Shown in pieces: positions 2,903 through 59,202 of a DNA stretch of 64,000 nucleotides. Below the pieces are notes generated by a model. It saw only the letters and a list, made by a program, of their open reading frames with translations, did no database searches and was not told the origin of the DNA. A program made the translations under genes and the position numbers. Location of the stretch: positions 248,001 through 312,000 of IMG/VR virus record IMGVR_UViG_3300020477_000990; one strand, written 5' to 3'. Within the stretch, counting starts at the first letter, position 1. The number at the start of each line of letters is the position of its first letter.

Positions 2903-3988
2903 ATGAACTATTATAATACTTACAATAGAATCGAAATAGAAATCACTTCAAAATGTAATGCGAGGTGTCCTGGTTGTTCTAGAAATGTAAATGGAATAAC
3001 AAATCCTCAATTACAAGTACAAGATTTATCATCTGAAAATTTTATAAAGTACGTCCCTAAAGAAGCATTAAAAGGAAAAAAGATTGAGTTTTGTGGGGTG
3101 TTTGGTGATCCAGTAATGCACAAAGATTTTATTACTATTGTAGAACATTGCCGATTATCAGAACCTTATTCTATTTCTATAGATACAAATGGTGGATCAC
3201 AGCCAACTAGTTGGTGGGAAAAACTTGCAACACTAGGAGTTGAAGTACAATGGAGTGTTGATGGTCATAGAAAAACAAATCATTTGTATAGAGTAAATGT
3301 AAAGTTTGATAAAATTTTAGAAAATATGAAAGCATTTTCTAAAGCAGGTGGTAAAGGTACATGGGAGTATATTGTATTTGATCATAATGAAAGTGAAATT
3401 AGTATAGCTAAAAAAGAAGCTCATGCTTTAGGTTTTGATTTTAATATTAGAAGAAATAGCAGAAATAATGAAGAAGGTTATATATCATACATTAAAGAAA
3501 AAGTAGCTGGAAAAGTTGTAACTACAAAATTTAAGGTAACACAATCAAATCCAGTACATAAGCATAGTGAAACAGAAACAGCTAAAAAAGAAGTCCAAAA
3601 AGATAATTTGCAAATTAGTTGTTTACTATATAATGATAAAAAAATGTTTTTAGGATTTGATGGACGTATTTGGCCTTGTTGTTGGTTCCATGATATCTAT
3701 AATGGTGCAGGTAATCCACAAGTAGAAGAAACATCACATGAATTAGCAACGCATCATAAACTTAAAAAATTAGATAGTAGGTATGGAGCCGGCTGGAATA
3801 GTATTATACACAATAGTTGGAATGATATATTAGGGCATGAATATTACCAAAAAATATTGCCAAATACATTTGATAGTACTAGCCCTAATTTTTTAAAAGA
3901 AGAAGCATTACCAAAATGTGCAAAAAAATGTAGGAAATCTGGAGCACTACGAGATGTAGAGCGAGTTAAATATATTGGTGATAAATAA
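2903..3988 (+). CDS. radical SAM enzyme with C-terminal SPASM/twitch domain (subfamily A)
   Basis: EITSKCNARCPGC (CxxxCxxC), FCGVFGDP, SVDG..TNHLYR; C-terminal SC...WPCC...C..KC. Confidence 0.85.
   Translation: MNYYNTYNRIEIEITSKCNARCPGCSRNVNGITNPQLQVQDLSSENFIKYVPKEALKGKKIEFCGVFGDPVMHKDFITIVEHCRLSEPYSISIDTNGGSQPTSWWEKLATLGVEVQWSVDGHRKTNHLYRVNVKFDKILENMKAFSKAGGKGTWEYIVFDHNESEISIAKKEAHALGFDFNIRRNSRNNEEGYISYIKEKVAGKVVTTKFKVTQSNPVHKHSETETAKKEVQKDNLQISCLLYNDKKMFLGFDGRIWPCCWFHDIYNGAGNPQVEETSHELATHHKLKKLDSRYGAGWNSIIHNSWNDILGHEYYQKILPNTFDSTSPNFLKEEALPKCAKKCRKSGALRDVERVKYIGDK
3980..3987 (+). promoter_or_regulatory. late promoter GATAAATA, leaderless geometry
   Basis: 5 nt before the ATG at 3993. Confidence 0.5.
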
Positions 3989-3992
3989 TTAT

Positions 3993-4433
3993 ATGAGCTT
4001 AAAAGACGATATTATTAATGGATTAGATAAATCAACAGAGTTTACTGACAGACTCAGTAAATTGGTTCATTTACCAAGATCAGTAGTTAAATCATTAACT
4101 GAACCATTGGGGCTTAAAGATTATATGAGTTTATCTAAAGCAGTTGATGAAGAAGATCCAGAAAGTGCTAAAAAAATATTATTAGATGTTGGATTTAGCA
4201 AATTAGATAATACAACCCAAAAGTTGTTATCTGAATATTCTAGTAAAGGTTCAACTAAAGCAGGAGCTTCGCAATCAGCTGGTAATAGAGATGGAAGAAA
4301 CGATACTGATCCAGAAGAAAAACCAGAACCAGCAGTTGATGATGATACAAAAGATGCAATTAATAAAATAGCTGATAAATCAGCTGAAATTGTACAATTT
4401 GCAGATATAGTTGCAAAAAATAATAAAAAGTAG
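3993..4433 (+). CDS. hypothetical protein
   Basis: ATG at 3993, in frame with the track ORF. Confidence 0.6.
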   Translation: MSLKDDIINGLDKSTEFTDRLSKLVHLPRSVVKSLTEPLGLKDYMSLSKAVDEEDPESAKKILLDVGFSKLDNTTQKLLSEYSSKGSTKAGASQSAGNRDGRNDTDPEEKPEPAVDDDTKDAINKIADKSAEIVQFADIVAKNNKK

Positions 4434-4439
4434 TATAAT
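4411..4439 (+). promoter_or_regulatory. sigma70-type promoter TTGCAA-N17-TATAAT
   Basis: direct motif match. Confidence 0.6.
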
Positions 4440-4447
4440 AAACTATA

Positions 4448-5173
4448 ATGTTTAGACAAAGAAGAAAGCAAAGACATGAAGAGCTAGAACGTGTACGTGG
4501 ACAAGCTCAAAATATGACTATTATAGAAATGATAGAACATCAACGTTTTTATAAAATTCTTAATGGTTGGAGTACTCCTAAAATTAGTAATGATTTTTTT
4601 AATGCGTGGGATAAAGTAATAGCTGAAGCTAGGCAAAAATTGCCAAGATATAAAAAACCAAATGTTGATAATGTTAAAAAATTATTGAATAAGTTAAATA
4701 AATTGGATAAATCAGTATTAAAAGAAGTAGTTGAATTAGGTATTGATACTAGATTAAATTTTAAAACAGCATTGCAAACATCAAAAACAGCTAAAGGTAT
4801 TAAAATAGGTGGTTATTTAATTAAACTTAATTACACGGGAAAGCGACAAAGCTATGATGTTATTAGAACATCAGATGAAAAAGATATAGCATTAGATATA
4901 AAATTATATGAAATGGCGTTTTGTATGGTTAACTATTTAAATGAAGGAGTATTAAGTACAGATCCAAGAATGGTTGAATTGCATGAAATATATTCAGACT
5001 ATTTAACGTATTCTGAACGAGCAACTCAATATAAAAGACGTTATTACGATGCTATAAAAGAGAGTAATAGTGCTAAACAGGAGAAAAATCTGGATGATTT
5101 TGAAAAAAATCGTGATATAGCCCTAGATTATAAGGCTAATATTATTGATTTATTCAAAAAAAATACAGCATAA
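4448..5173 (+). CDS. hypothetical protein
   Basis: 241 aa ORF with typical codon bias. Confidence 0.65.
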   Translation: MFRQRRKQRHEELERVRGQAQNMTIIEMIEHQRFYKILNGWSTPKISNDFFNAWDKVIAEARQKLPRYKKPNVDNVKKLLNKLNKLDKSVLKEVVELGIDTRLNFKTALQTSKTAKGIKIGGYLIKLNYTGKRQSYDVIRTSDEKDIALDIKLYEMAFCMVNYLNEGVLSTDPRMVELHEIYSDYLTYSERATQYKRRYYDAIKESNSAKQEKNLDDFEKNRDIALDYKANIIDLFKKNTA

Positions 5174-5187
5174 AAAATAAAGAAAAG

Positions 5188-5195
5188 TATAAATA
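5188..5195 (+). promoter_or_regulatory. late promoter TATAAATA
   Basis: exact T4 gp55 consensus. Confidence 0.6.
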
Positions 5196-11033: not shown

Positions 11034-11061
11034 TTGACAATACAACGAGAGAGTGTATAAT
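11034..11061 (+). promoter_or_regulatory. sigma70-type promoter TTGACA-N16-TATAAT, leaderless geometry
   Basis: -10 ends 6 nt before the ATG at 11068. Confidence 0.7.
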
Positions 11062-11067
11062 AGAATT

Positions 11068-12168
11068 ATGAAAACAGTATTCAATAAAAACAGTAATATA
11101 GATTTTACAAAGCAACCAATGTTTTTTGGAGAAGATCAGAATGTGCAAAGGTATGATGTTTTTAAATATCCACAGTTTGATAAATTAAATCAAACTATGC
11201 TAGGATACTTTTGGAGACCTGAAGAAGTAAGTTTACAAAAAGATAGAGCAGATTATCAAACATTTAGACCAGAACAAAAACATATTTTTACAGCAAACTT
11301 AAAATACCAAACGTTATTAGATTCAGTACAAGGTAGAGGACCAAGTTTAATGTTTTTACCTTATGTTTCTAATCCTGAGTTAGAAGGCTGTATTGTTACT
11401 TGGGATTTCTTTGAAGCATTACACTCTAGAAGTTATACTCATATTATGAAAAATGTATATTCTGATCCAAGTGAAGTATTTGATACAATATTAGATGATA
11501 AAGAAATTTTAAAACGTGCTGTTAGTGTTACAAAAAATTATGATTCATTTGGAGAAGCGGCACAAAATTATGTAGTTAAAGGTAAAGGAGATATTCTTGA
11601 TGTTAAGAAAAAACTTTACCTAGCAATGGTAAATGTAAATATTTTAGAAGGATTAAGATTTTATGTTTCTTTTGCTTGTACATTTGCTTTTGGCGAATTG
11701 AAACTTATGGAAGGGTCAGCAAAAATTATTTCATTAATTGCAAGAGATGAAGCAACACATTTAAATTTAACTACTCATGTAATTAAAGCATGGCAAAAAG
11801 GTGATGATTCTCAAATGTTAAAAATTATTAAAGATACTAAAAAAGATGTTGAAGAAATGTTTAGAAATGCTGTTGATGAAGAAAAAGCATGGGCAAATTA
11901 TTTAATGAAAGATGGTTCAATTATAGGACTTAATTCAAAATTATTAGGTGATTACGTTGAATGGATTGCAAATAAAAGATTGCGAGCTATTGGCTTTGAT
12001 CCAATATATGATATTCCTGCTACACAGAACCCGTTACCATGGACGCAACATTGGCTATCAAGTGCAGGAATGCAAGTTGCCCCACAAGAAACAGAAGTTG
12101 AAAGTTATATTATCGGTGGGTTAAAACAAGACGTAGATGATAAAACTTTCGAGGACTTTAAACTATAA
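11068..12168 (+). CDS. nrdB: ribonucleotide reductase class Ia beta subunit
   Basis: FWRPEEV, LLDSVQGR, EALHSRSY, EGLRFY, RDEATH, VAPQETE. Confidence 0.97.
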   Translation: MKTVFNKNSNIDFTKQPMFFGEDQNVQRYDVFKYPQFDKLNQTMLGYFWRPEEVSLQKDRADYQTFRPEQKHIFTANLKYQTLLDSVQGRGPSLMFLPYVSNPELEGCIVTWDFFEALHSRSYTHIMKNVYSDPSEVFDTILDDKEILKRAVSVTKNYDSFGEAAQNYVVKGKGDILDVKKKLYLAMVNVNILEGLRFYVSFACTFAFGELKLMEGSAKIISLIARDEATHLNLTTHVIKAWQKGDDSQMLKIIKDTKKDVEEMFRNAVDEEKAWANYLMKDGSIIGLNSKLLGDYVEWIANKRLRAIGFDPIYDIPATQNPLPWTQHWLSSAGMQVAPQETEVESYIIGGLKQDVDDKTFEDFKL

Positions 12169-15242: not shown

Positions 15243-15285
15243 GTTTATCCTTGACTAAATACCATAAAATATAGTATTATTTAGT

Positions 15286-15648
15286 ATGACGTATTATGTA
15301 AATGAAAATTGTATAAAATGTAAGCACACAGATTGCGTAGAAGTTTGTCCAGTTGATTGTTTTTATGAAGGTGAAAACTTTCTTGCTATTAAACCTGATG
15401 AATGTATTGATTGTGGAGTCTGTGAACCAGAGTGTCCAGTTGATGCAATAAAAGCCGATACTGATCCAGAGCAACCTAAAGCTGAAATAGATAAATGGGT
15501 TGAGCTAAATACAATGTATGCTAACCAATGGCCCAATATAACAAAAAAGAAAGATGCATTACCTGAAGCAAAAGAATATGATCCAGAAACTTATAAAGAA
15601 GATAAAACATCTTTACTATCTGAAAAGCCAGGTACAGGAGATGAATAA
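15286..15648 (+). CDS. fdxA: 7Fe/8Fe ferredoxin, FdxA type
   Basis: [18 protein letters not shown] and [12 protein letters not shown]. Confidence 0.93.
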
Positions 15649-16586: not shown

Positions 16587-16615
16587 TTGACTTTTGATAC
16601 AAAATATAGTATTAT
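16587..16615 (+). promoter_or_regulatory. sigma70-type promoter TTGACT-N17-TATTAT, leaderless geometry
   Basis: -10 ends 6 nt before the ATG at 16622. Confidence 0.65.
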
Positions 16616-16621
16616 TAAGTA

Positions 16622-17113
16622 ATGAGTCTACTTGAAAAAATAAAACAATTATTTCCAACAGCTTCAAAGCCTAATGATGTAAAAACAATTGGAGATGACC
16701 TTCTTCATAATAGTTTTTTACAACTTACGGAATATGTTGAGCTTGTAGTTGCACAAATATATAAATTAACTAAAGATACTACATATAGAAGTCGTGAAGA
16801 TGGGCTTAAAGGTATAGAATGGCTAAAGAAACAAAAAGAAAAAGATATCAAATACCAGTCAGCATTGGATGAAATTAGAATTCTATATACATGGTGGAAT
16901 GATTTAAGACCAAAAAGAAATGATCCGTGGAAAGGAATTGATCGATCATTTGGTGATTTTAGAGACGAATGGCTAAATACAACGGAAGATAAAAATCCAG
17001 AGTATAAAAGTTTTATGGATCAATGTCGTCATGCAGAGAAAATTCAAAAAGTATATGGCATTGAGGATACCAAGATGCTAATAAGGTTGGTTAACATTAG
17101 AGAATATTTGTAA
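16622..17113 (+). CDS. hypothetical protein
   Basis: 163 aa ORF. Confidence 0.6.
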   Translation: MSLLEKIKQLFPTASKPNDVKTIGDDLLHNSFLQLTEYVELVVAQIYKLTKDTTYRSREDGLKGIEWLKKQKEKDIKYQSALDEIRILYTWWNDLRPKRNDPWKGIDRSFGDFRDEWLNTTEDKNPEYKSFMDQCRHAEKIQKVYGIEDTKMLIRLVNIREYL

Positions 17114-18006: not shown

Positions 18007-20076
18007 ATGAATACTAAAGACTTAACGCGATACAGAAATATAGGTATTATTGCCCACGTTGATGCTGGTAAAACAACTACAACAGAAAGAATATTATACT
18101 ATACCGGAAAATCCCATAAAATTGGTGAAGTTCACGATGGAGCCGCGACAACGGACTACATGGAACAAGAACAAGAACGTGGTATAACAATTACATCAGC
18201 GGCAACTACAGTTTTTTGGAACGATCACAGAATTAACATTATTGATACACCAGGACACATTGACTTTAACATTGAAGTAAACAGATCATTAAGAGTACTT
18301 GATGGTGCTGTAGTAGTATTTGATGGAGTTGCAGGTGTAGAACCACAATCAGAAACAAACTGGCGTTTAGCAGATCAATACAGAGTTCCAAGACTTTGTT
18401 TTGTAAACAAATTAGATAGAACAGGTGCAGATTTTTTAAGATGTGTTGAAATGATTAAAGAAAGACTAGGTGCAAAACCAGTTATAATGACAATACCAAT
18501 TGGTGCAGAATCTAATTTGCAAGGTATTGTAGATTTAGTTACAATGAAAGCAATAGTTTGGGATGGAGAGCAATTAGGTGCTTCATTTAATGAGCAAGAA
18601 ATTCCAGAAGATATGAAAGCTGATGCTGAAAAATATAGAACAGAATTAATTGATACTGTAGTTGAACAAGATGAAGCTGTAATGGAATCATATTTAGAAG
18701 GTGAAGAACCAACAGTAGAACAAATTAAGTCTTGTGTTAGAAAAGGTACAGTTGCATTTGATTTTGTTCCTGTATTATGTGGTAGTGCATTTAAAAATAA
18801 AGGTGTACAACCTTTACTAGATGCAGTAGTTGATTACTTACCTGCACCAACAGAAGTTGATGCAATATATTCTATAGATGAAAATGGTGAACAAAAAGAT
18901 CCTATTAAATCTGACCCGTCATTACCATTTAGTGCGTTAGCATTTAAAATTATTAATGACAAGTATGGTGCATTAACATTTGCTAGAGTATATAGTGGTA
19001 AGGCAAGTTCAGGACATACACTTTACAATTCAACAAGAGATGAAAAAGAACGTATTGGTAGAATATATGAAATGCACGCCAATTCAAAAGAAGAAGTAAA
19101 AAATATACAAGCTGGTGATATTATTGCATTTGTAGGATTAAAAAATGTTACTACAGGTGATACTTTAGTTGCAGAAGATAGTGAAGTAGTATTAGAAAGA
19201 ATGGTGTTTCCAGAACCAGTTATTGATATTGCAGTAGAACCAAAAACAAAAGATGACCAAGAAAAAATGGGAGAAGCACTTGGTAAGTTTGTACAAGAAG
19301 ATCCAAGTTTACGAGTTAAAACAGATCAAGAAACAGGTCAAACAATTTTAAGTGGAATGGGTGAATTGCATTTAGAAATTATTGTTGATAGAATGAAAAG
19401 AGAATTTAAAGTTGGCGCCAATATTGGTAAGCCACAAGTTGCTTATAGAGAAACAATAACAAAACCATATGAAGTAACATATACACATAAAAAACAATCA
19501 GGTGGTTCAGGACAATTTGCACATATTGTTTGTAATATTGAACCAGGACAACGTGGTGATGGGTATACATTTGAAGATGAAATTAAAGGTGGTAATGTTC
19601 CTAAAGAATTTATACCATCAGTTGAAGATGGGTTTAAAACACAAGGCTATTCAGGAGTATTAGCAGGATGGCCAACAGTAGATTATAAAGTTACATTGTT
19701 AGATGGAAAATATCACGAAGTAGATTCATCAGCAATAGCATTTGAAATTGCGGCAAAGGCCGCTTTTAGAGAAGGTATGAAACAAGCAGGACCAGTATTA
19801 TTAGAACCTATGATGAAAGTTGAAGTTATTACACCTGAAGAATATTTAGGAGATGTAATAGGTGATTTAAGTTCACGTAGAGGACAAATTAGAGGGCAAG
19901 AACCAAGAGGTAATGGATTAGTGTTAGATGCATTAGTTCCTTTAGCCCAAATGTTTGGATATGTTGGTAATTTACGTTCTTTAACAAGCGGTAGAGCGTC
20001 ATACAGCATGGAATTTAATAGTTATGAAATTGTACCAAGCAATGTACAAGAAGAAATAGTAGCAGGAAACCAATAA
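18007..20076 (+). CDS. fusA: elongation factor G
   Basis: [57 protein letters not shown]; 689 aa. Confidence 0.98.
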
Positions 20077-20838: not shown

Positions 20839-21261
20839 ATGGCTAAAGAAGTAGTCGGGCTGATTAAATTACAAATTCCAGCCGGACAAGCCAAACCAGC
20901 CCCGCCAGTAGGGCCAGCTCTTGGACAGAGAGGTGTGAATATCATGGACTTCTGTAAGAAGTTTAATGATAAAACTAAAGCCATGGAAGGTCCAATACCT
21001 GTTACTATAACGGTCTATAAAGATAAGAGTTTCATTTTTGAGCTAAAACAACCACCAGTATCGTTTTTTATATTAAAAGCGGTTGGTTTAAAAAAAGGTG
21101 GCAGAACGCCTGGTCGTTCAGTTATTAAAAGAATAACTAAAGCACAGGTAAGAGAGATAGCTGAGAAAAAAATGGTTGATATGAATGCCTTCACAGTTGA
21201 GCAGGCGATGAAGCAAGTTGAAGGCTCATGTCGTTCGATGAGTATCGAAGTTGTCAAATAA
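20839..21261 (+). CDS. rplK: 50S ribosomal protein uL11
   Basis: [35 protein letters not shown]...GSCRSM. Confidence 0.97.
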
Positions 21262-22817: not shown

Positions 22818-22825
22818 TATAAATA
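22818..22825 (+). promoter_or_regulatory. late promoter TATAAATA, leaderless geometry
   Basis: 5 nt before the ATG at 22831. Confidence 0.6.
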
Positions 22826-22830
22826 ATATT

Positions 22831-24213
22831 ATGTTTATGGCAATACTTACATTGCTGACTGCATTAAGCATTTCAGCGGTAGCGATTTACTATTCAATTG
22901 CAGGTTTGGCGGCTATATTTGCCGCGGCGGCAATCCCTATTATGATTATGGGTACTGTTCTTGAGGTTGGTAAGTTAGTAGCGGCCTCTTGGTTGTATCA
23001 AAACTGGAAGGCGGCTCCAGGGGCAATTAAAACATATCTATCAATTGCAGTTGTTGTATTAATGCTAATTACGTCAATGGGTATATTTGGATTTTTATCT
23101 AAAGCACACGTAGAGCAAACGTCATTAGGATCTACACAACAAGTTAAATTAAACAACATAGAAGAAAAAATTATTAGATCAGAAAATAAAATTGAACGTT
23201 GGTCAGATGAAATTGCAAGACTTAATAGTGGGCAAAATGTTCGTGTTGATATTTTAATTGATAAGCAAAATGAAGAACTAGCAGTATTGTATGAAAGAAT
23301 TAAAGAAGAAAAGAACGAATTAAGAGCCCAAGCAGATAAAGATATTGAATTACAAAATAATAGATTATTACAAGCAAAAGAACGTAAAGAATCAGATATT
23401 GCCGCGGCACAAGAAAGATTTAAAGGTTCTTTTAGTAAAAGAAAATTAGATGAAGCTATAGCAGAAGCTAAAGCAAATGAACTTGCAGTTGCTTCGGCGG
23501 CACAAAGAATTATTGTAGAAATACAAAATAAGTTACAAGAAAATCTTGCTAAAATTGATGAAAAATATGCTCCACAAATAGAAAATATTAATGCAACAAT
23601 TAACGGTTTAAGATCAGAAGCAAACGTTAAGACAGATAATATTGATACAAGAATTGATGAGTTAGAAATATTCATTGAAGAAGAACAAGATTCGTTAAAC
23701 CAAGTAAATGAAGATAAAATTATTATTGTAATGGAACAGCAAAAACTTGAAGTAGAAGTTGGTCCATTAAAATATATTGCAGAATTTATATATGGGCAAG
23801 AAGCAGATAGAAATTTATTAGAACAAGCAGTACGTTGGGTTATTATTACAATTATATTTGTATTTGATCCACTAGCAGTATGTTTATTAGTAGCGGCTAA
23901 TATGTCACTTATTAGAAGATTTGGAAGAGGATTTGAAAAACAATATGAGTACGATCCTAATTTAATAAAAGAATATACTGGTAAGAAGCCAACAAGTGTA
24001 ACACCAGAGCAAAAAAAAGACGAAAAAGAATTAGCACAGATAAAAGATAGTAATGCTGAATTAGAAAAAAAATTAAGTGAAGCTGAATCAAAATTAGCTG
24101 AACAATTAGATTATCAAAAATCTTTAGAAGATAAACCAGAAAAGTTGGTCATCAATATTGATGAAACAGCTACAATTGATGCAGAAGATGACACCGAGAA
24201 AAAAAAAGGATAA
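22831..24213 (+). CDS. multi-TM membrane protein with a long coiled coil
   Basis: three to four N-terminal hydrophobic helices, heptad core, TM IIFVFDPLAVCLLVAA. Confidence 0.7.
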   Translation: MFMAILTLLTALSISAVAIYYSIAGLAAIFAAAAIPIMIMGTVLEVGKLVAASWLYQNWKAAPGAIKTYLSIAVVVLMLITSMGIFGFLSKAHVEQTSLGSTQQVKLNNIEEKIIRSENKIERWSDEIARLNSGQNVRVDILIDKQNEELAVLYERIKEEKNELRAQADKDIELQNNRLLQAKERKESDIAAAQERFKGSFSKRKLDEAIAEAKANELAVASAAQRIIVEIQNKLQENLAKIDEKYAPQIENINATINGLRSEANVKTDNIDTRIDELEIFIEEEQDSLNQVNEDKIIIVMEQQKLEVEVGPLKYIAEFIYGQEADRNLLEQAVRWVIITIIFVFDPLAVCLLVAANMSLIRRFGRGFEKQYEYDPNLIKEYTGKKPTSVTPEQKKDEKELAQIKDSNAELEKKLSEAESKLAEQLDYQKSLEDKPEKLVINIDETATIDAEDDTEKKKG

Positions 24214-26796: not shown

Positions 26797-27350
26797 AAAA
26801 GCATTTCATTAGAAGAAACAACAAACCAACGGTATTATTAAACTCTGCAATTACCTTTCCAGAAATTAGGTTAATTGATCCAGATGGACAATTTATTGGA
26901 ATAGTTCGAAATCAAGAAGCACATCAAAAAGCCAGAGATGCAGGATTAGATTTAATTTGTATTGCCGATAAGGCAAGTCCTCCTGTTTGCCGTATTATGG
27001 ACTTTGGTAAATGGAATTATGAAAAACAAAAAGCCGATAAGGAAAAGAAAAAGAAAGAACGAGCTAATCGAATTGAATTGCATGAAGTACAATTAAGACC
27101 AGGAACAGATGTTCATGATCTTAAAGTTAAATTAAAAAAAGTACAAGAATTTATAGATGATGGAGATAAAGTAAAAATGGTAATGAAGTTACGAGGTAGA
27201 GAAATTGGGCAAGGAACTATGTTTGTAGATCAATTAAAAGTTATGGTTGCTGGCCAATTAGAATTAGGTAAATTTGATTCTCCACCAAAGCAGTTTGGTA
27301 ATAAAATTATTGCAACAGTTTCTAAACAAAATGAGAAAAAAAATGCTTGA
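26793..27350 (+). CDS. infC: translation initiation factor IF-3
   Basis: [39 protein letters not shown]; GTG start after GGAG. Confidence 0.93.
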
Positions 27351-27374: not shown

Positions 27375-27380
27375 ATTATT

Positions 27381-29295: not shown

Positions 29296-29299
29296 TACT

Positions 29300-39629: not shown

Positions 39630-39822
39630 GCTAATTGGTTACGAAGATCCAGAAAAGCACGAAATAATATCTCAAGATGAAACATTAGACAGAACATGGC
39701 TTCCTAGTCATGCAGAAGATATTATTACAGTTACAGATAAGCAATTTGTTTTGGCCAAGTTAAAATATCCAGACGTAGAAATATTAGGTTTTTATTCATA
39801 TCCACTTGATCTTTTGAAATAA
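39622..39822 (+). CDS. small hypothetical protein
   Basis: 66 aa, overlaps the clpP stop. Confidence 0.5.
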
Positions 39823-39834
39823 AACAAGTATAAT
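39806..39834 (+). promoter_or_regulatory. sigma70-type promoter TTGATC-N17-TATAAT, near-leaderless
   Basis: -10 ends 7 nt before the ATG at 39842. Confidence 0.55.
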
Positions 39835-39841
39835 AAACATT

Positions 39842-40561
39842 ATGGCGTTAGATATATTTCATTTAAGTTACCAAGAGCCTTATGCGGATAAAACTTGGAA
39901 ATCACTTGTAAAAAGGTTTCCTTATGCTAGGCGTGTAAAAGGAATAAAAGGAATTTTTAATGCACACAAACGATGTGCAGAATTGGCTTATACAAAATCT
40001 TTTTATGTGGTTGATGCAGATGCTATATTAGAACCTGATTTTGATTTTAGCTTTAAGCCAAGTAAATGGGATGAACATTGCACTCATGTTTGGCGTTGTA
40101 AAAATCCAATAAATGATTTAGTATATGGTTATGGTGGTGTTAAATTATTTCCTACACAAACTTGTAGATCTGCAAATGAATGGCGAATAGATTTTACAAC
40201 ATCGGTATCAAATAAACCTGGAGAAAAAGGTGCATTTAAGGCAATGCCAACTATTAGTAATGTTACGGCATTTAATACAGATCCTTTTAATACATTTAAA
40301 TCAGCATTTAGAGAATGTACAAAACTAGCGGCAAAGGTAATTGACAAACAAAAAGATCATGAAACCGAGCAAAGATTAAATGTTTGGTGTAGTGTAGGTT
40401 CAGATAAAGGGTTTGGTGAATATGCAATTGCCGGTGCTATTGCCGGTAGAGAATATGGTGAAGCAAATAAAAATAATATGGAGGCATTAAGTAAAATAAA
40501 TGACTTTGGCTGGCTTGAGCAACAGTTCAACAAAATCCAAATCTCATCTAGAAGTACATGA
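39842..40561 (+). CDS. glycosyltransferase-like (GT-A) protein
   Basis: DIFHLSY.EP, NAHKRCA, YVVDADA (DxD), GYGGVKLF. Confidence 0.6.
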   Translation: MALDIFHLSYQEPYADKTWKSLVKRFPYARRVKGIKGIFNAHKRCAELAYTKSFYVVDADAILEPDFDFSFKPSKWDEHCTHVWRCKNPINDLVYGYGGVKLFPTQTCRSANEWRIDFTTSVSNKPGEKGAFKAMPTISNVTAFNTDPFNTFKSAFRECTKLAAKVIDKQKDHETEQRLNVWCSVGSDKGFGEYAIAGAIAGREYGEANKNNMEALSKINDFGWLEQQFNKIQISSRST

Positions 40562-41399: not shown

Positions 41400-41656
41400 T
41401 GCCAAAGTATGTATATAGATTAAAGTCTAAAGATCAACCAGTTCTTTTTCGTGAAACAGGAAAGTTCATGGAGATTCCAATGGTAGAAGACGAATTAGAA
41501 GTAGTACATCAAATTGAAGAATGGATAAAAGAAAATTGTTCTCAGTCTGCAAGTATAGAATCCTTTGATAATTATGATTATACAGGTAAGGACAAAATTA
41601 CCATTTACTTTAAAAGTAAAGAAGATTTGCTACTTTTTAAGCTCAAGTTTGAGTAG
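41399..41656 (+). CDS. small hypothetical protein
   Basis: 85 aa, coupled. Confidence 0.55.
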   Translation: MPKYVYRLKSKDQPVLFRETGKFMEIPMVEDELEVVHQIEEWIKENCSQSASIESFDNYDYTGKDKITIYFKSKEDLLLFKLKFE

Positions 41657-41662
41657 TAAATA
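41657..41662 (+). promoter_or_regulatory. late promoter core TAAATA, leaderless geometry
   Basis: 5 nt before the ATG at 41668. Confidence 0.5.
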
Positions 41663-41667
41663 CATAT

Positions 41668-42777
41668 ATGTACAGATATGAAGATATACGAACAGTACAT
41701 TTAGAAATCACAGCGAAATGTCAGGCCGCTTGTTTGCAATGTGATAGAAATGTTAATGGTGGTGAAATAAATCCAAATATTTCACTTGATGAGTTATCTC
41801 TTGAAGATTGCAAAAAAATATTTCCACCTGAATTTGTAAAACAATTAGATAGTTTGTTTATGTGTGGTAATTTAGGTGACCCAGTTATTGCACAAGATTC
41901 ACTTGAAGTAATGGAATATTTACGTAGTCAAAATTCTAATATTTGGTTAAGCATGAATACAAATGCCGGCGCCAAAAAATCAGAGTGGTGGAAAGATTTA
42001 GCAAAAATACTTGGTAAGCAAGGCCATGTAATTTTTAGTTTTGATGGATTAAAAGATACTAATCATTTATATAGGCAAAATGTTAATTGGGATATATGTA
42101 TGGATTCGGCACAGGCGTTTATTGATGCAGGTGGTAGAGCAAGATGGGATTATTTAATATTTGGACATAATCAGCATCAAGTTGAAGATGCAAAAGCATT
42201 ATCAGAACGTATGGGATTTGAAAAATTTATGAGTAAAAAAACTGGTAGATTTTTTAGTAATGTAAAAGCAAAAGGAAAAGAAGAACATCAAGGTGTAAAT
42301 CGTAAAGGTAAACAAACACAAAAACTTACAAAGCCAGATGAAAAATATGTAAACAAAGCTCTTAAGAAAGAAGATTTACTTATAGAAAAATATGGATCTA
42401 TGAATAATTATTATGATAAAGCACATATTAATTGTAAAGTATTAAAAGATATGAATGTATATGTAAGTGCATCAGGACATTTGATGCCTTGTTGTTGGGT
42501 AGCAGGACAAATGTACAAGTGGTGGGAGAAGCCAGGAGAAAATCAAATTTATAGATTTATAGAGCAAGTAGGTGGACTTGATGAGCTATCAGTTTTACAA
42601 CATGGTTTTAAAAAAGTTTTAGAAGGAGACTTTTTTAATAATATAAAAGCAAGTTGGAAAAAAACTTCTTGTAATGGCGGCGATGGAAAATTAAAAGTAT
42701 GTTCTGTTAAATGTGGTACAGAGTTTGATCCATTTGGTGCACAATTTGAAGATAACTTCGTTACAACAGCAAGGTAA
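41668..42777 (+). CDS. radical SAM enzyme with C-terminal SPASM/twitch domain (subfamily A)
   Basis: CQAACLQC, MCGNLGDP, SFDG..TNHLYR, INC...MPCC, CSVKC. Confidence 0.88.
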   Translation: MYRYEDIRTVHLEITAKCQAACLQCDRNVNGGEINPNISLDELSLEDCKKIFPPEFVKQLDSLFMCGNLGDPVIAQDSLEVMEYLRSQNSNIWLSMNTNAGAKKSEWWKDLAKILGKQGHVIFSFDGLKDTNHLYRQNVNWDICMDSAQAFIDAGGRARWDYLIFGHNQHQVEDAKALSERMGFEKFMSKKTGRFFSNVKAKGKEEHQGVNRKGKQTQKLTKPDEKYVNKALKKEDLLIEKYGSMNNYYDKAHINCKVLKDMNVYVSASGHLMPCCWVAGQMYKWWEKPGENQIYRFIEQVGGLDELSVLQHGFKKVLEGDFFNNIKASWKKTSCNGGDGKLKVCSVKCGTEFDPFGAQFEDNFVTTAR

Positions 42778-42786
42778 ATATATAAA

Positions 42787-44256
42787 ATGAGCAATAATAA
42801 ACTACCATCAAAAACGTTTTGTGCGTTACCGTGGATGCATTTATCAACTAGACCAGATGGAAATATGCGAGTATGTTGTACAGCTAACGCAAGTTCAGTA
42901 GGTGCAACTAATGATAAAAAGCATGGTGGACAAGTTGGTATTCTAAAAAAAGATAATGGTGTTCCTGCAAACTTAAATAATTCAGATTTAATGTCATCGT
43001 GGAATAATGATTATATGAAGAACGTTCGTTTACAAATGTTAAACGGAGAAAAACCACCAGCTTGTTTAAAATGTTTTAAAGAAGAAGATGCAGGTCATAA
43101 TTCAAAACGTATGTGGGAAACTGAATATTGGATGAATAGATATTCTTTAGAAGATATGATTGGTGAAACAAAAGAAGACGGTTCTATTCCACCTAAAATT
43201 AGATATATTGATTTGCGTATGGGATCTAAATGTAATTTAAAATGTATTATGTGTAGTCCACATGATTCTTCATTATGGGTCAAAGATTGGTTAGACGTAT
43301 ATCCTACAATTAAAAATCCACAGCTAAAGCAAACAATGGGTTGGGATAATAAAGGTAAAGTACATGGCGCTGGTTATAACTGGCATAAAAATAACGAAGT
43401 ATTTTGGAAGCAGTTATATGAGCAAATACCTCATATGTATCAATTATATTTTGCAGGCGGTGAGTCTACAATTATAGAAGAACATTATACATTATTAGAA
43501 GAAGTTATTAGAAGAGGATATGCTCCTAAAATAGAATTACGTTATAATTCAAATGGTGTTGAAATGCCAGATAGATTATTTGAATTATGGAGTCATTTTA
43601 AAAGAGTGCGTTTTCATTATAGTGTAGATTCAATTGAAGAAATGAATCGTTATATACGTTTTCCTGCAGATTGGGATAATACAGTTAAACAATTTCATTT
43701 GTTAGATAATACAGAAGATAAAGTAGAAGTAACAATTGCCTGTGCAGTACAGGCTTTGAATATACATTATATTCCAGATTTTATTAAATGGAAATGGAAA
43801 CAAAATTTTAAAAAAATAAATGTATGGCCATTTGGAGCAGGTATGTTAAATTATCACTTTGTATATTGGCCTGGGCAATTAAATGTAAAAGCATTGCCAC
43901 AATGGATGAAAAATAAAACAAAAGAAAAATATGAAGCATTTTATCCTTGGTTATTAGAAAATTGGAAACTATCCGGTGCACCAAGTAAAGAAGCATTTAT
44001 GGAAGCAAGTTACGGTATTAAAAGATTAAAAGGAATGATTCAATTTATGATGTCAGAAGATTGGTCAAGACGTATGCCAGAATTTAGAGAATATATTACA
44101 AAATTTGATAAGCAACGTGGCACAGATTTTGCTAAAACTTTTCCGGATATGGCTGATATGTTAGATGAGTCATTAGATTATAGTGTTAAACCAATAACCG
44201 GTGAAAGTATTGATGAAAAAACAGAGAAGGAATTAGAAGATGGCGGAACAATCTGA
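42787..44256 (+). CDS. radical SAM enzyme with N-terminal SPASM/twitch domain (subfamily B)
   Basis: FCALPW...RVCC, CLKC, CNLKCIMC, FAGGE, YNSN. Confidence 0.88.
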   Translation: MSNNKLPSKTFCALPWMHLSTRPDGNMRVCCTANASSVGATNDKKHGGQVGILKKDNGVPANLNNSDLMSSWNNDYMKNVRLQMLNGEKPPACLKCFKEEDAGHNSKRMWETEYWMNRYSLEDMIGETKEDGSIPPKIRYIDLRMGSKCNLKCIMCSPHDSSLWVKDWLDVYPTIKNPQLKQTMGWDNKGKVHGAGYNWHKNNEVFWKQLYEQIPHMYQLYFAGGESTIIEEHYTLLEEVIRRGYAPKIELRYNSNGVEMPDRLFELWSHFKRVRFHYSVDSIEEMNRYIRFPADWDNTVKQFHLLDNTEDKVEVTIACAVQALNIHYIPDFIKWKWKQNFKKINVWPFGAGMLNYHFVYWPGQLNVKALPQWMKNKTKEKYEAFYPWLLENWKLSGAPSKEAFMEASYGIKRLKGMIQFMMSEDWSRRMPEFREYITKFDKQRGTDFAKTFPDMADMLDESLDYSVKPITGESIDEKTEKELEDGGTI

Positions 44257-54592: not shown

Positions 54593-55584
54593 ATTTCAGC
54601 GAATGTATGTTGTTTTTTTCCAAAGTGAGAACAACTCTTTTGACATCTTGACAAGAACATAGGATGGTTTTCATTCCAACTATCTTTTAGTATTTGTGAG
54701 AACCATTCATGATCTAATATATCTTGAATATCATGTTCAAGTGAATTATTCCAATTAGAACTATATTTAGAAAATTTTTCAGACATATCATCACGTTTGT
54801 ACCAATTATTATCATACAAATAACAACAAGGCCAAATTTGATAATTAGCACCAAAGTAAATTTCACCTTCATGTATTAGTTTACATTTTATATTTAAATT
54901 TTTAGTTTCGTTTTTAATTTCAGGATGTTGATATTTTTTATTTGTTAAAGATACTTTGTTTATAACTTCTTTAGTTTTTTTATTAACTACAGTATGCGTA
55001 CTTTCTTGTTTCATAGAATAACGTAGTGAAAATTTAAATCCAAGTTTAGTAGATAGTTGTTGTGCTTTTTCTATATCATCGATATTATGATCAAATGGAT
55101 TATAAACCCATTGTCCTTTGCCACCAGCATCAGAATATGCAGTCATATTTTCTACAAGTTTATTCCAATTAACACCAACTCTATAAATGTGATTTGTATT
55201 TTCAAAGCCATCTACACAAAAACGCATATCTAATTTTGGATTGTCTTTGCTAATTGCTCCTAGTTCTGCCCAATATTCTTTTGAACGCAATCCACCGTTA
55301 GTAGAAACAATTATAACCTTTGGATTCATAGATAATGTGTATTCACATATTTCTATAAATTCTTGATTTACTAATGGATCGCCTAAAACACCACAATAAA
55401 AAATTTCTTTGTTTTCTATATATTCTTTTGAGTGTAATACTTTTTTATAGTTTTCTAGAGTAATATCAGCTAATTCTACATCTGGGTTAGTTTCCCCTTT
55501 TAATGTTCTAGCACACCCAGGACATCTAGCATTACATCTAGTGGTTAATTCTACTTCTATTTTCTTAAGATTTTGTACGAGCAT
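54589..55584 (-). CDS. radical SAM enzyme with C-terminal SPASM/twitch domain (subfamily A)
   Basis: ELTTRCNARCPGC, YCGVLGDP, CVDG..TNHIYR, IKC...WPCC, CQKSC. Confidence 0.87.
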   Translation of the reverse strand: MLVQNLKKIEVELTTRCNARCPGCARTLKGETNPDVELADITLENYKKVLHSKEYIENKEIFYCGVLGDPLVNQEFIEICEYTLSMNPKVIIVSTNGGLRSKEYWAELGAISKDNPKLDMRFCVDGFENTNHIYRVGVNWNKLVENMTAYSDAGGKGQWVYNPFDHNIDDIEKAQQLSTKLGFKFSLRYSMKQESTHTVVNKKTKEVINKVSLTNKKYQHPEIKNETKNLNIKCKLIHEGEIYFGANYQIWPCCYLYDNNWYKRDDMSEKFSKYSSNWNNSLEHDIQDILDHEWFSQILKDSWNENHPMFLSRCQKSCSHFGKKQHTFAEI

Positions 55585-55589
55585 AGTAA

Positions 55590-55597
55590 TATTTATA
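55590..55597 (-). promoter_or_regulatory. late promoter TATAAATA on the minus strand, leaderless geometry
   Basis: 5 nt before the minus-strand ATG at 55584. Confidence 0.6.
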
Positions 55598-58153: not shown

Positions 58154-58398
58154 TGGACATTTGGGTTAATCCTGTACAGGAAAATAAAATAAGAAAGTTA
58201 GGATTTACTATTCCTGAAAGACCAGGAAGAGGTAAAGTTTTTTATGAAAATGAAGAAGTAGGTTTTATTGATGACTTTATTGGAATAAGAATAGAAGATA
58301 ATAAAACAGACGCAATTATAAAGTTATTGGACAATGAAGAAGCATTGAAATTATGTATATGGAATCCACCGTCAATAGAAAGAACTAACCATGGATAA
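58153..58398 (+). CDS. hypothetical protein
   Basis: 81 aa, coupled. Confidence 0.55.
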   Translation: MDIWVNPVQENKIRKLGFTIPERPGRGKVFYENEEVGFIDDFIGIRIEDNKTDAIIKLLDNEEALKLCIWNPPSIERTNHG

Positions 58399-58654
58399 TA
58401 TTATAAACATAAAAGAATTAAGAACTAAAAAGAATAAACAAGCAAGTAATAGTGCTGAAGAAATATGTCAGCATGGATTTAAAGGATTGCTATCTCATAT
58501 GTATGCAAGTGGCTTTCCTATCATGGAGCCAGAATTCCAAAAAGATTTATCAATAGCATTTAAATTTATTCATGCCGCAGTTTCTAGGCAATATGGTTTA
58601 GAAAGTCCTTTTATAGAAGCAATAGACGAGTTTAAGAAGAACCAAAAGTTCTAA
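58391..58654 (+). CDS. hypothetical protein
   Basis: 87 aa, coupled. Confidence 0.55.
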   Translation: MDNIINIKELRTKKNKQASNSAEEICQHGFKGLLSHMYASGFPIMEPEFQKDLSIAFKFIHAAVSRQYGLESPFIEAIDEFKKNQKF

Positions 58655-58908
58655 TGATAACTAAAGAGCAGTATAAAAACTTAAAGGCCTATTACGATTA
58701 TCAAAGATTAAAAGAATATAATAAAGAAAAGTTAAGAGAAAAGATATTTCATTTAGTAAAGCAATTTGACGATGAAGATGGAGATGATTTCAATATTGAT
58801 ACAATATTTGAAAGAATGTGGGCAGATATGAAAGAAGAAGATTATGATAGGCCTATTCCATGGAGTTGGGTTCCTAAAGATCCTAAATGGAGATTGTGGA
58901 ATGAATAA
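58654..58908 (+). CDS. hypothetical protein
   Basis: 84 aa, coupled. Confidence 0.55.
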   Translation: MITKEQYKNLKAYYDYQRLKEYNKEKLREKIFHLVKQFDDEDGDDFNIDTIFERMWADMKEEDYDRPIPWSWVPKDPKWRLWNE

Positions 58909-58918
58909 TAAAAAAGTA

Positions 58919-58947
58919 TTGATTTTTTAATTAAACTATTGTATTAT
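58919..58947 (+). promoter_or_regulatory. sigma70-type promoter TTGATT-N17-TATTAT, leaderless geometry
   Basis: -10 ends 6 nt before the ATG at 58954. Confidence 0.55.
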
Positions 58948-58953
58948 AAACAT

Positions 58954-59202
58954 ATGGTCGACAGCAAAATAGTAAATTTAGATAAAATCCGGAAAACAAG
59001 AAAAAGAAAAAGTCCAAGTAAAACTTCAAAAGCATTTGATCTTGGTGATTTATTAAAATGTGATCTCGAGAAAGCTAGAAAAATGCTAGAAAGTGTTTTT
59101 CCAGGACACAATATATTAGAAGTTATAGATGATGGTAAGAAGAGATTATTAATTAGAGGTCCAAAGTTAAATTGTGTGTTGACAGCGAGGGAAGATTTAT
59201 GA
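58954..59202 (+). CDS. small basic hypothetical protein
   Basis: ATG at 58954, in frame with the track ORF. Confidence 0.55.
   Translation: MVDSKIVNLDKIRKTRKRKSPSKTSKAFDLGDLLKCDLEKARKMLESVFPGHNILEVIDDGKKRLLIRGPKLNCVLTAREDL

What the first reader, a model, noticed from the sequence alone, without database searches (positions are those of the whole stretch)
3980..58954. Systematic leaderless transcript geometry in both promoter classes
Seen: the sigma70 -10 ends exactly 6 nt before the ATG for nrdB (11068), 16622, rpsU (27381), 30389 and 58954, and 7 nt for 39842. The late motif ends exactly 5 nt before the ATG at 3993, 22831, 41668 and 55584(-), and 6 nt at 42787. None has an SD between promoter and ATG. 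Established: these spacings put +1 on the A of AUG, and IF-3 levels and 70S availability govern leaderless initiation. Inference: the phage relies heavily on leaderless mRNAs, and its IF-3, bS21, uL11 and EF-G may retune ribosomes between leaderless and SD-led messages.
Basis: partly seen in the sequence, partly recalled or inferred. Interest (0 to 1): 0.75.

Follow-up and report, generated by a model that had tools for sequence, protein, structure and literature searches.

The report
Leaderless gene starts in marine phage
About one gene in seven of this 328-kb marine T4-like phage has its promoter placed so that the transcript should begin at or within 3 nt of its ATG, with no ribosome-binding leader. 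The same layout occurs in cultured SAR11 phages but not in T4 or cyanophage Syn9.

Summary
All 11 sites have the stated spacing. Genome-wide (328,149 bp), an ATG opening an ORF of at least 50 codons lies exactly 6 nt after a TTGACA-N16-18-TATAAT-type promoter 13 times (background about 1.3 per offset). It lies exactly 5 nt after TAAATA 25 times (background about 2.8), with a second peak at 8 nt. About 57 of 417 genes (14%) have this layout, including nrdB, helicase, primase, terminase and a virion protein. Most other genes have Shine-Dalgarno leaders.

The A of the ATG sits where leadered promoters of the same class have their consensus start (T at -1, purine at +1). A gp55 late sigma factor is encoded. 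Metatranscriptome contigs begin exactly at 30389 and at 27382-27385. The layout is kept at orthologues in a close relative. It is also seen in pelagiphages HTVC008M and Mosig, but not in T4 or Syn9.

The idea that phage IF-3, bS21, uL11 and EF-G retune ribosomes is untested. Relatives with the layout lack IF-3, uL11 and EF-G, and only bS21 co-occurs (8 of 8 against 0 of 2, confounded by ancestry). The closest precedent is Thermus phage phiYS40. This is a new member of a known kind.

The parts
11034..11070 (+). Early promoter TTGACA-N16-TATAAT, 6 nt, then the ATG of nrdB (gene 11068-12168). The promoter fills the whole 36-nt gap after nrdA.
   Evidence: The N-terminus MKTVFN is conserved in 80 relatives. 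The closest clade keeps the 6-nt spacing while the 6-mer itself varies.
15251..15288 (+). Early promoter TTGACT-N18-TATTAT, 5 nt, then the ATG of a ferredoxin gene (15286-15648).
   Evidence: The protein starts [12 protein letters not shown]; by my recollection this is how 7Fe-type ferredoxins begin (not tested).
16587..16624 (+). Early promoter TTGACT-N17-TATTAT, 6 nt, then the ATG of a 163-aa protein of unknown function.
27347..27383 (+). Early promoter TTGACA-N16-TATTAT, 6 nt, then the ATG of the bS21 ORF (27381-27713). The S21 domain begins at residue 41. A canonical-length protein would start at ATG 27495.
   Evidence: RNA contig X25 record 17 aligns from 27385 with 3 unaligned letters before it. 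Relatives also have Lys/Arg-rich N-terminal extensions. The G002 orthologue has a promoter 8 nt from its ATG.
30355..30391 (+). Early promoter TTGACA-N16-TATTAT, 6 nt, then the ATG of an 81-aa protein.
   Evidence: RNA contigs X20 record 13 and X26 record 23 both begin to align exactly at 30389.
39806..39844 (+). Early-type promoter TTGATC-N17-TATAAT, 7 nt, then the ATG of a 239-aa protein. The -35 is weaker.
58919..58956 (+). Early-type promoter TTGATT-N17-TATTAT, 6 nt, then the ATG of an 82-aa protein.
3980..3995 (+). Late motif GATAAATA, 5 nt, then the ATG of a 146-aa protein. The stop of the upstream radical-SAM gene (3986-3988) overlaps the motif.
22818..22833 (+). Late motif TATAAATA, 5 nt, then the ATG of a 460-aa protein.
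   Evidence: Orthologues in G004 and G005 keep TAAATA at 5 nt.
41655..41670 (+). Late motif AGTAAATA, 5 nt, then the ATG of a radical-SAM protein (41668-42777).
   Evidence: The G002 orthologue has TAAATA at 7 nt.
42773..42789 (+). Late motif GGTAAATA, 6 nt, then the ATG of a radical-SAM/SPASM protein (42787-44256).
55582..55597 (-). Late motif TATAAATA, 5 nt, then the ATG (55584) of a radical-SAM protein on the minus strand. This is a strand-switch junction, so the gene needs its own promoter.
2887..2905 (+). Late motif GTTAAATA, 8 nt, then the ATG of a radical-SAM protein. The predicted leader is 3 nt.
29284..29302 (+). Late motif GATAAATA, 8 nt, then the ATG of a radical-SAM protein. The predicted leader is 3 nt.
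18007..20076 (+). EF-G gene. TATAAATA ends 24 nt upstream of the ATG, so the leader is about 19 nt with no clear SD.
   Evidence: The best cellular relatives are marine Alphaproteobacteria at 64-67% identity.
20839..21261 (+). uL11 gene, SD-led (AGGAG).
26793..27350 (+). IF-3 gene. It is a full two-domain factor with a GTG start and a GGAG SD. TAAATA lies 31 nt upstream, which predicts a late start at about 26767.
   Evidence: RNA contig X25 record 16 starts at about 26774-26777.

Best explanation
These are real promoter-start fusions. In about 57 genes, the intergenic spacer consists of little but a promoter. The promoter is either a host sigma-70-type early one or a T4-type late one read by the phage gp55 sigma factor. 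It is positioned so that RNA polymerase starts on the A of the ATG, or 3 nt before it in the late 8-nt subclass. The resulting mRNAs have no leader and no Shine-Dalgarno sequence.

By analogy with lambda cI, Caulobacter and Thermus phage phiYS40, they would be translated by direct binding of the ribosome (70S with initiator tRNA) to the 5'-terminal AUG.

The phage runs two systems side by side. About two thirds of genes are SD-led, and about 14% are leaderless in both temporal classes.

The layout is a lineage trait of marine bS21-carrying T4-like phages, probably with alphaproteobacterial hosts. It is not a trait of T4-like phages in general.

Shown here: the geometry, its statistics, its conservation, and RNA 5' ends at two sites. 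Inferred: the exact start at the other sites, and the mode of translation.
For: **Position of the ATG**
- Sharp peaks at 6 nt (early) and 5 nt (late), with p about 1e-9 and 5e-16.
- The ATG's A falls where leadered promoters of the same class have their consensus start. Early leadered: A in 13 of 18 here, and T-A-T in G001 (n = 51). Late leadered: T at the fifth nt in 33 of 54 and a purine at the sixth in 46 of 54.
- This matches the T4 late promoter at -13 to -6 (PMC1524935).
- The start codon at the peaks is ATG 38 times, against 3 GTG and 1 TTG.

**These are the real gene starts**
- Only 7 of 57 have any SD-led in-frame start within 50 codons.
- The nrdB N-terminus is conserved from residue 1-2 in 80 relatives. 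The DnaJ-like, ferredoxin and Rossmann-type proteins also begin as such proteins usually do, by my recollection.
- Early leaderless genes sit behind gaps with a median of 38 nt, none 10 nt or less. Genes with neither an SD nor a promoter sit at gaps of about 0 nt, which fits coupling. Fifteen leaderless genes are at strand switches.
- The first 40 nt are less structured than in SD-led genes (p = 0.01).

**The motifs behave as early and late promoters**
- Helicase, primase, exonuclease and nrdB carry the early type. Terminase and a virion protein carry the late type. A gp55 late sigma is present, with E = 3e-81.

**RNA and comparative evidence**
- Metatranscriptome contigs begin at 30389 (two runs of one sample) and at 27382-27385 (another sample). 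That is 3 of 10 phage contig left ends within 4 nt of 3 predicted sites in 6 kb.
- Orthologues in G002 (43-84% aa identity) keep the layout at terminase, virion protein, helicase, primase, bS21 and others.
- The peaks are present in G001-G005, HTVC008M and Mosig, and absent in T4 and Syn9.
- In HTVC008M, 7 of 7 TAAATA-N5-ATG matches between 6 and 20 kb are GenBank CDS starts.
Against: - No true 5'-end mapping exists. The RNA evidence is the ends of short assembled contigs from low-coverage metatranscriptomes. Each carries 2-3 unaligned letters at the end, so starts 0-4 nt from the ATG cannot be told apart. DNA carry-over is not excluded.
- Gene calls are my own ORF-based calls.
- For bS21, the conserved domain starts at residue 41. 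A start at 27495 would make that mRNA leadered.
- A few weak -35 cases (39842, 58954, 4448) could be chance.
- In Caulobacter a 3-nt leader cuts leaderless translation several-fold (PMC8459731). The 8-nt late subclass is therefore not explained by the simple model.
- Distant orthologues in G001 mostly have a leader plus an SD, so the trait is labile.
- A SAR11-like genome shows no -10 peak at 6 nt, so the host's capacity for leaderless translation is unproven.
Confidence: 0.8

Rival explanations
1. Chance in an AT-rich genome. TATAAT-like and TAAATA-like strings are common at 32% GC and happen to fall before ATGs.
For: -10-like hexamers alone occur at about 5-10 per offset before first ATGs. 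Some listed sites have weak -35 elements.
Against: The peaks are single-offset and 9-10 times background. Same-composition hexamers give none, and TAAATA is depleted two-fold. T4 at 35% GC shows no peak. The layout is conserved at orthologues.
Confidence: 0.02
2. The promoters are real, but the ATG at +1 is incidental. The start consensus is T-A-T, and a G at the third position can arise by chance. Translation would then begin at a downstream start, so the mRNAs are leadered.
For: In G001 many perfect promoters are followed by ATA, ATT or ATC at the same place. The bS21 domain begins at residue 41, with an ATG at 27495. Gene 135397 has SD-led ATGs at codons 6-7.
Against: The ATG must open an in-frame ORF of at least 50 codons. 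Fifty of 57 have no SD-led alternative within 50 codons. The nrdB N-terminus is conserved across 80 relatives. By my recollection, the J-domain, ferredoxin and Rossmann motifs also begin at residues 1-5 as such proteins usually do. I estimate 3-4 such accidents by chance, not 13 plus 25.
Confidence: 0.07
3. The genes are translated from longer polycistronic transcripts by termination-reinitiation or 70S scanning. The AT-rich motif before the ATG would be a translation signal (for example for S1), not a promoter.
For: Most leaderless genes follow a same-strand gene (41 of 56). Eight late ones have gaps of 10 nt or less, for example 3993, where the upstream stop lies 4 nt before the ATG. The class with neither an SD nor a promoter clearly uses coupling.
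Against: The early class has full -35/-10 pairs with 16-18-nt spacers, and no gap is 10 nt or less. Fifteen genes are at strand switches, where no upstream transcript exists. T at -1 and a purine at +1 are conserved in the 8-nt class too. Early and late motifs sort with early and late functions. RNA contigs start at the ATG.
Confidence: 0.08
4. One reading: phage IF-3, bS21, uL11 and EF-G shift ribosomes between leaderless and SD-led messages.
For: All four genes are present. IF-3 dosage and 70S availability affect leaderless translation in E. coli (PMC9031893). Thermus phage phiYS40 is reported to raise host IF2 and lower IF3 while making leaderless mRNAs (PMC3594737). bS21 co-occurs with the geometry in 8 of 8 genomes against 0 of 2.
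Against: G001, HTVC008M and Mosig have the geometry without IF-3, uL11 or EF-G. The phage IF-3 looks canonical. Extra IF-3 would be expected to inhibit leaderless translation, not favour it. The bS21 correlation is confounded by shared ancestry and host. There are no functional data.
Confidence: 0.15

Closest known systems
Thermus thermophilus phage phiYS40 (and, from my own recollection, P23-45): leaderless middle/late mRNAs
   Same: A large lytic phage whose promoters abut the start codon, so that many transcripts lack a leader. phiYS40 is reported to be linked to changes in initiation-factor levels, with IF2 up and IF3 down (PMC3594737).
   Different: There, most middle and late transcripts are leaderless, and the host phylum uses leaderless mRNAs widely. 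Here it is about 14% of genes, in both the early (sigma-70-type) and the gp55-type late class, next to a majority of SD-led genes. The phage is T4-like, probably on an alphaproteobacterial host, and it encodes its own IF-3 and bS21 rather than changing host levels.
Lambda cI mRNA from PRM (also P2 gene V, from memory): single leaderless phage mRNAs
   Same: A sigma-70 promoter is placed so that +1 is the A of AUG. Translation is by 70S binding to the 5'-terminal AUG (PMC10491246, PMC9031893).
   Different: Those are single regulatory genes in temperate phages. Here there are dozens of genes, including replication and structural ones.
Leaderless mRNAs of Caulobacter crescentus (Alphaproteobacteria)
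   Same: About 10% of mRNAs are leaderless (385 of about 4,000). There is a near-exclusive AUG, a zero-length leader and an accessible 5' end (PMC8459731). The same three features are seen here.
   Different: That is a cellular genome at 67% GC. In Caulobacter each extra 5' nt roughly halves output, which makes the 3-nt-leader subclass seen here odd.
T4 late promoters (gp55/gp33/gp45, TATAAATA at -13 to -6)
   Same: The same core motif, a gp55 homologue, and late functions downstream (PMC1524935).
   Different: In T4 and cyanophage Syn9 the motif lies about 20-30 nt before the ATG, with an SD in between, and there is no peak at 5 nt. Here the first T of the octamer is poorly kept, so the core is TAAATA.
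Phage-encoded bS21 (pelagiphage HTVC008M; Bacteroidota phages)
   Same: bS21 is encoded by large phages and has been proposed to bias initiation towards phage mRNAs (PMC6375957, PMC9723584).
   Different: The papers I searched and read draw no link to leaderless gene starts. Here bS21 co-occurs with the geometry, and its own mRNA appears to be leaderless.

Membership tests
Leaderless bacterial mRNA | The transcript 5' end is at the start codon, or within a few nt of it. | tested here: inconclusive
   It is predicted from the promoter geometry at all sites. Assembled RNA contig ends lie at 30389 and at 27382-27385. There is no primary-5'-end mapping.
Leaderless bacterial mRNA | No Shine-Dalgarno sequence or other leader upstream of the start. 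| tested here: met
   Only 5-8 nt separate the promoter element from the ATG. Fifty of 57 have no SD-led alternative start within 50 codons.
Leaderless bacterial mRNA | Strong preference for AUG as the start codon. | tested here: met
   At the peak offsets there are 38 ATG, 3 GTG and 1 TTG. About 14% of SD-led calls are non-ATG.
Leaderless bacterial mRNA | An accessible, unstructured 5' end. | tested here: met
   Mean folding energy of the first 40 nt is -1.97 against -2.62 kcal/mol for SD-led genes, p = 0.01. The effect is modest.
Leaderless bacterial mRNA | Translation by direct 70S or initiator-tRNA binding to the 5' AUG. | not testable with these tools
   This needs toeprinting, ribosome profiling or reporter assays.
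Sigma-70-type promoter | -35 TTGACA and -10 TATAAT hexamers 16-18 bp apart, with the start about 7 nt after the -10. | tested here: met
   A at the seventh nt is also the consensus in leadered promoters. The genes downstream are early functions.
T4-type late promoter (gp55-dependent) | TATAAATA-like element at -13 to -6. | tested here: met
   The core TAAATA is followed by T at the fifth nt and a purine at the sixth. The motif is depleted elsewhere in the genome. Its position is defined in PMC1524935.
T4-type late promoter (gp55-dependent) | The phage encodes the late sigma factor gp55. | tested here: met
   G000 192150-192956 matches phrog_12791, 'sigma factor for late transcription', at E = 2.9e-81. 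It also matches T4 gp55 weakly, at E = 9e-5.
T4-type late promoter (gp55-dependent) | Co-activator gp33 and sliding clamp gp45. | tested here: inconclusive
   The Syn9 gp33 query found nothing in this genome. gp33 is small and diverges fast. gp45 was not searched.
phiYS40-type leaderless expression strategy | Most middle and late transcripts are leaderless. | tested here: not met
   About 14% of genes have the layout, and roughly a quarter to a third of recognisable promoters. Two thirds of genes are SD-led.
phiYS40-type leaderless expression strategy | Infection shifts initiation-factor balance (IF2 up, IF3 down). | not testable with these tools
   The phage adds an IF-3 gene of its own. Protein levels during infection are unknown.

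The most novel reading that the evidence does not exclude
A clade of marine T4-like phages runs a second, leaderless translation channel for core genes, and phage bS21 is the factor that makes host ribosomes serve it or switch between the two channels. The clade includes the cultured SAR11 phages HTVC008M and Mosig. The core genes include terminase, helicase, primase, nrdB and tail and head parts. This would give the first functional rationale for virus-encoded bS21.
Probability: 0.12. Interest if true: 0.85.

Novelty: new member of a known kind. Interest (0 to 1): 0.6.

Why it matters
T4-like phages are the textbook case of SD-led translation from early, middle and late promoters. Here a large marine branch of them places both host-type and gp55-type promoters directly on the ATG of dozens of genes, core replication and virion genes among them.

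This matters in three ways.
- Gene callers and promoter finders tuned to SD signals will misplace starts in these abundant ocean phages.
- It shows that the gp55 late system can produce leaderless mRNAs, which I did not find described in the literature searched.
- It turns the open question of why phages carry bS21 (and here IF-3) into a concrete test, because HTVC008M and Mosig share the layout and grow on a cultured host.

The literature searches found no mention of leaderless transcripts for pelagiphages or cyanophages.

Tried and rejected
- **Upstream stop codons.** I checked whether TAAATA peaks because it holds a TAA stop of the upstream gene. Other stop-containing hexamers show no peak, so I rejected this.
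- **Host lineage.** I looked for the same -10-to-ATG peak in a candidate host lineage, 392 kb of a Pelagibacteraceae single-cell genome. The profile is flat, and crude pattern counts in four alphaproteobacterial genomes were near their controls. I found no evidence that the host shares the layout, but the host is not identified.
- **Distant orthologues.** Orthologues in the distant G001 mostly have a leader plus an SD, so conservation holds only among closer relatives.
- **gp33.** The search gave nothing.
- **Initiator tRNA.** The single tRNA-Met(CAT) lacks the three G-C pairs in the anticodon stem and has a paired 1-72 end. I judged it not to be an initiator, by eye.
- **Transcriptome papers.** A pelagiphage transcriptome paper (PMC12753301) has no promoter or start-site data. 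phiKZ dRNA-seq found no leaderless phage transcripts (PMC8244752), and AR9 has long leaders (PMC5312081). Neither jumbo-phage model is a precedent.
- **Caps.** Read laying allowed one call only, so just one 6-kb stretch could be compared with RNA.

Full report
**What the window is.** The window is bases 248,001-312,000 of a 328,149-bp IMG/VR virus record with direct terminal repeats and 31.8% GC. It is a T4-like marine myophage. It encodes a gp55-type late sigma factor (phrog_12791, E = 2.9e-81), a T4-type large terminase, a helicase and a primase. Its nearest cultured relative by nrdA DNA is Pelagibacter phage Mosig, at 73.7%. EF-G is at 18007-20076, uL11 at 20839-21261, IF-3 at 26793-27350 and bS21 at 27381-27713. 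The IF-3 aligns along its full length with E. coli IF-3. The host is probably an alphaproteobacterium. The phage carries a two-piece tmRNA of the alphaproteobacterial type (RF01849, 131.6 bits). The best cellular matches of its EF-G are marine Alphaproteobacteria and Pelagibacteraceae single-cell genomes, at 64-67% identity.

**Checking the observation.** For every promoter-like match, I counted ATGs at each offset that open an ORF of at least 50 codons.
- For TTGACA (at most 1 mismatch)-N16-18-TAnnnT (at most 1 mismatch from TATAAT), 13 of 194 matches have such an ATG at exactly 6 nt. The background is 1.27 per offset (p about 1e-9). With an exact TTGACA it is 9 of 48.
- For TAAATA, 25 of 490 lie at exactly 5 nt and 12 at 8 nt. 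The background is 2.8 (p about 5e-16 and 3e-5).
- Hexamers of the same composition show no peak. TAAATA is only half as frequent as they are, as expected for a signal that is avoided elsewhere.
- A broad second hump at 20-36 nt holds the ordinary promoters, which have leaders and clear SD sequences.

**How many genes.** I used a simple codon-usage ORF caller of my own (417 genes, 92.6% coding).
- 277 genes have an SD.
- 21 have an early-type promoter abutting the ATG.
- 36 have a late-type promoter abutting the ATG.
- 83 have neither.

About 14% of genes therefore have the leaderless layout, and about 15 of them lie in the window.

**Is the ATG really at +1?** Leadered promoters of the same classes show the same start context at the same distance.
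- In 18 leadered early promoters, the seventh nt after the -10 is A in 13 and never G or C. In the relative G001 (n = 51) the consensus there is T-A-T.
- In 54 leadered late motifs, the fifth nt is T in 33 and the sixth is a purine in 46.
- The late 8-nt subclass also has T then a purine at those positions (11 of 12 and 12 of 12). Its predicted transcripts therefore carry a 3-nt leader.
- This agrees with the T4 late promoter lying at -13 to -6 (PMC1524935). It also agrees with the usual sigma-70 start 7 nt after the -10, which I state from general knowledge.

**Is the ATG the real start codon?**
- Only 7 of 57 have any SD-led in-frame start within the next 50 codons, and only two have one nearby.
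- The nrdB N-terminus is conserved from residue 1-2 in 80 relatives.
- By my recollection of these families, several other proteins start as their families do. Examples are a J-domain at residue 3, a ferredoxin beginning [12 protein letters not shown], and a GxGxxG Rossmann motif at residue 6.
- At the peak offsets the codon is ATG 38 times, GTG 3 times and TTG once.
- The first 40 nt fold slightly less stably than in SD-led genes (p = 0.01).
- bS21 is the weak case. The Pfam domain begins at residue 41, and ATG 27495 would give a canonical-length protein. However, related phage bS21 genes also have Lys/Arg-rich N-terminal extensions, one of them with its own SD. The G002 orthologue again has a promoter 8 nt before the extended start.

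**Are the motifs promoters rather than translation signals?**
- The early leaderless genes sit behind gaps with a median of 38 nt. None is 10 nt or less, and a gap of that size is just the length of a promoter. For example, the 36-nt nrdA-nrdB gap is filled entirely by the promoter.
- Genes with neither an SD nor a promoter sit at gaps of about 0 nt, which is the signature of translational coupling.
- Fifteen leaderless genes are the first gene after a strand switch.
- Motif class matches function. Helicase, primase, exonuclease, nrdB, ferredoxin and a DnaJ-like protein carry the early type. Terminase, a virion protein and a set of radical-SAM enzymes carry the late type.

**RNA.** Four marine metatranscriptome runs hold parts of window 25001-31000. 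They are kept only as assembled contigs.
- Of about ten phage-specific pieces, two (X20 and X26, from the same sample) begin to align exactly at 30389.
- One piece from another sample (X25) begins at 27385, with three unaligned letters before it.
- The other left ends look unrelated to predicted starts, except one 7-10 nt downstream of a predicted late start before IF-3.
- My rough estimate for two independent hits within 4 nt of three predicted sites in 6 kb is about 2e-4.

This is supportive but not decisive. Contig ends are not mapped 5' ends, each contig has 2-3 unaligned terminal letters, and DNA carry-over cannot be excluded.

**Relatives.**
- The closest nrdB relatives keep TTGACA-N16/17-TATAAT-6 nt-ATG while the 6-mer changes. 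More distant ones have a 16-nt spacing, an SD, or no promoter.
- G002 is a 243-kb fragment whose terminase is 73% identical. There the layout is kept at terminase, a virion protein, helicase, primase, bS21 and several others. Sometimes it switches between 5 and 8 nt. At nrdB it switches from the early to the late class while staying leaderless.
- In the more distant G001 (328,096 bp, 40% GC), orthologues mostly have leaders with an SD. Yet G001 has its own strong peaks, 16 at 6 nt and 33 at 5 nt. The trait is a property of the lineage and turns over gene by gene.
- The cultured pelagiphages HTVC008M and Mosig show the peaks: 12 and 6 at 5 nt, and 2 and 5 at 6 nt. T4 and cyanophage Syn9 do not. 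Their late motifs lie 20-30 nt before the ATG.
- In HTVC008M, all seven TAAATA-N5-ATG matches between 6 and 20 kb coincide with GenBank CDS starts. These include head-closure, baseplate, tape-measure and DNA-end-protector genes.
- A SAR11-like single-cell genome shows no -10 peak at 6 nt. I therefore have no evidence that the layout simply copies host practice, but the host is not identified.

The first half, a systematic leaderless geometry in both promoter classes, stands. The second half, retuning of ribosomes by IF-3, bS21, uL11 and EF-G, remains speculation.
- Among ten genomes or large contigs, bS21 is present in all eight that show the peaks and in neither T4 nor Syn9.
- IF-3 and uL11 occur only here and in G002, and EF-G occurs only here. 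IF-3, uL11 and EF-G are therefore not needed for the architecture.
- The bS21 link is suggestive but confounded. Two of the eight were picked through bS21 itself, and all eight may share ancestry and host.
- The phage IF-3 is SD-led with a GTG start and seems to have a late promoter. Excess IF-3 inhibits leaderless translation in E. coli (PMC9031893), so a simple model in which phage IF-3 favours leaderless mRNAs is not obvious.

**Comparison with what is known.** Leaderless mRNAs are well known.
- Lambda cI is the classic single-gene case (PMC10491246).
- About 10% of Caulobacter mRNAs are leaderless and follow the same three rules seen here (PMC8459731).
- The closest precedent is Thermus phage phiYS40. 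It makes most middle and late mRNAs without leaders and is reported to shift host IF2 and IF3 (PMC3594737).
- The phiKZ and AR9 jumbo phages have no leaderless transcripts (PMC8244752, PMC5312081).
- Searches of the held library found no report of leaderless starts in pelagiphages, cyanophages or other T4-like phages.

I therefore file this as a new member of a known kind. The mechanism is familiar. It is new for the T4-like lineage and for gp55-type late promoters, and it carries a testable link to phage bS21.

**Unexplained.** I cannot explain why the late class has a second sharp peak at 8 nt (a 3-nt leader) but few cases at 6-7 nt. In Caulobacter each added 5' nt roughly halves leaderless translation (PMC8459731).

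Noticed in passing
G000:C1:94952-95270 (outside the window; locus L309 438-729): The phage encodes a permuted two-piece tmRNA of the alphaproteobacterial type (RF01849, 131.6 bits; tag ADENLALAA). It also has 15 tRNAs. This points to an alphaproteobacterial host.
   Followed up: partly
window 2903-3988, 29300-30352, 41668-42777, 42787-44256, 54589-55584(-); genome 145014-146195(-), 224363-225616: There are at least seven radical-SAM paralogues, one with a SPASM domain. Every one has TAAATA abutting its ATG. This is an unusually large radical-SAM set for a phage, and its function is unknown.
   Followed up: no
genome-wide; window examples 2903 and 29300: The late motif shows a second sharp peak at 8 nt (12 genes, predicted 3-nt leader) but few at 6-7 nt. 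G002 shows the same pattern (20 at 5 nt, 10 at 8 nt). Orthologues switch between 5 and 8 nt.
   Followed up: partly
window 27381-27494: The bS21 ORF has a 38-residue Lys/Arg-rich N-terminal extension before the canonical S21 start. Related phage bS21 genes have different extensions of 12-34 residues.
   Followed up: partly
window 28800-28950: A cluster of tRNA genes (Ile, Val, Asp at genome 276800-277031) attracts metatranscriptome contigs from other organisms' tRNAs. This produces spurious 'joints' in the read layout.
   Followed up: no
window 30701-30998 (gene 30760-31224, just upstream of dnaK at 31253-33145): RNA contigs of very high depth (up to 530) cover this stretch with 7 differences. 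They look like a highly expressed close homologue from a related phage or a cell. I did not identify the gene.
   Followed up: no
loci L008-L011, L016, L017, L020, L021, L026-L030, L033-L037, L046, L047, L050, L051, L053 (upstream of nrdB): Many nrdB relatives carry a conserved GATAATTAAT element 5-7 nt before the ATG instead of the early promoter. It could be another promoter type or a variant late motif.
   Followed up: no
G001 (IMGVR_UViG_3300040801_001224), whole genome: This relative is almost the same size (328,096 bp). Its early promoters are extremely uniform, with a CCACT motif in the spacer and T-A-T at the start. There are 45 matches to the full pattern with at most 1 mismatch.
   Followed up: no
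G002 locus upstream of nrdB (L025), compared with window 11034-11070: The promoter class before nrdB differs between close relatives. It is the sigma-70 type here and ATAAATA, 6 nt before the ATG, in G002. The gene start stays leaderless in both.
   Followed up: partly
window 18007 upstream region: EF-G follows a perfect TATAAATA, with a leader of about 19 nt that has no recognisable SD. Some genes may therefore use a third mode, leadered without an SD.
   Followed up: no
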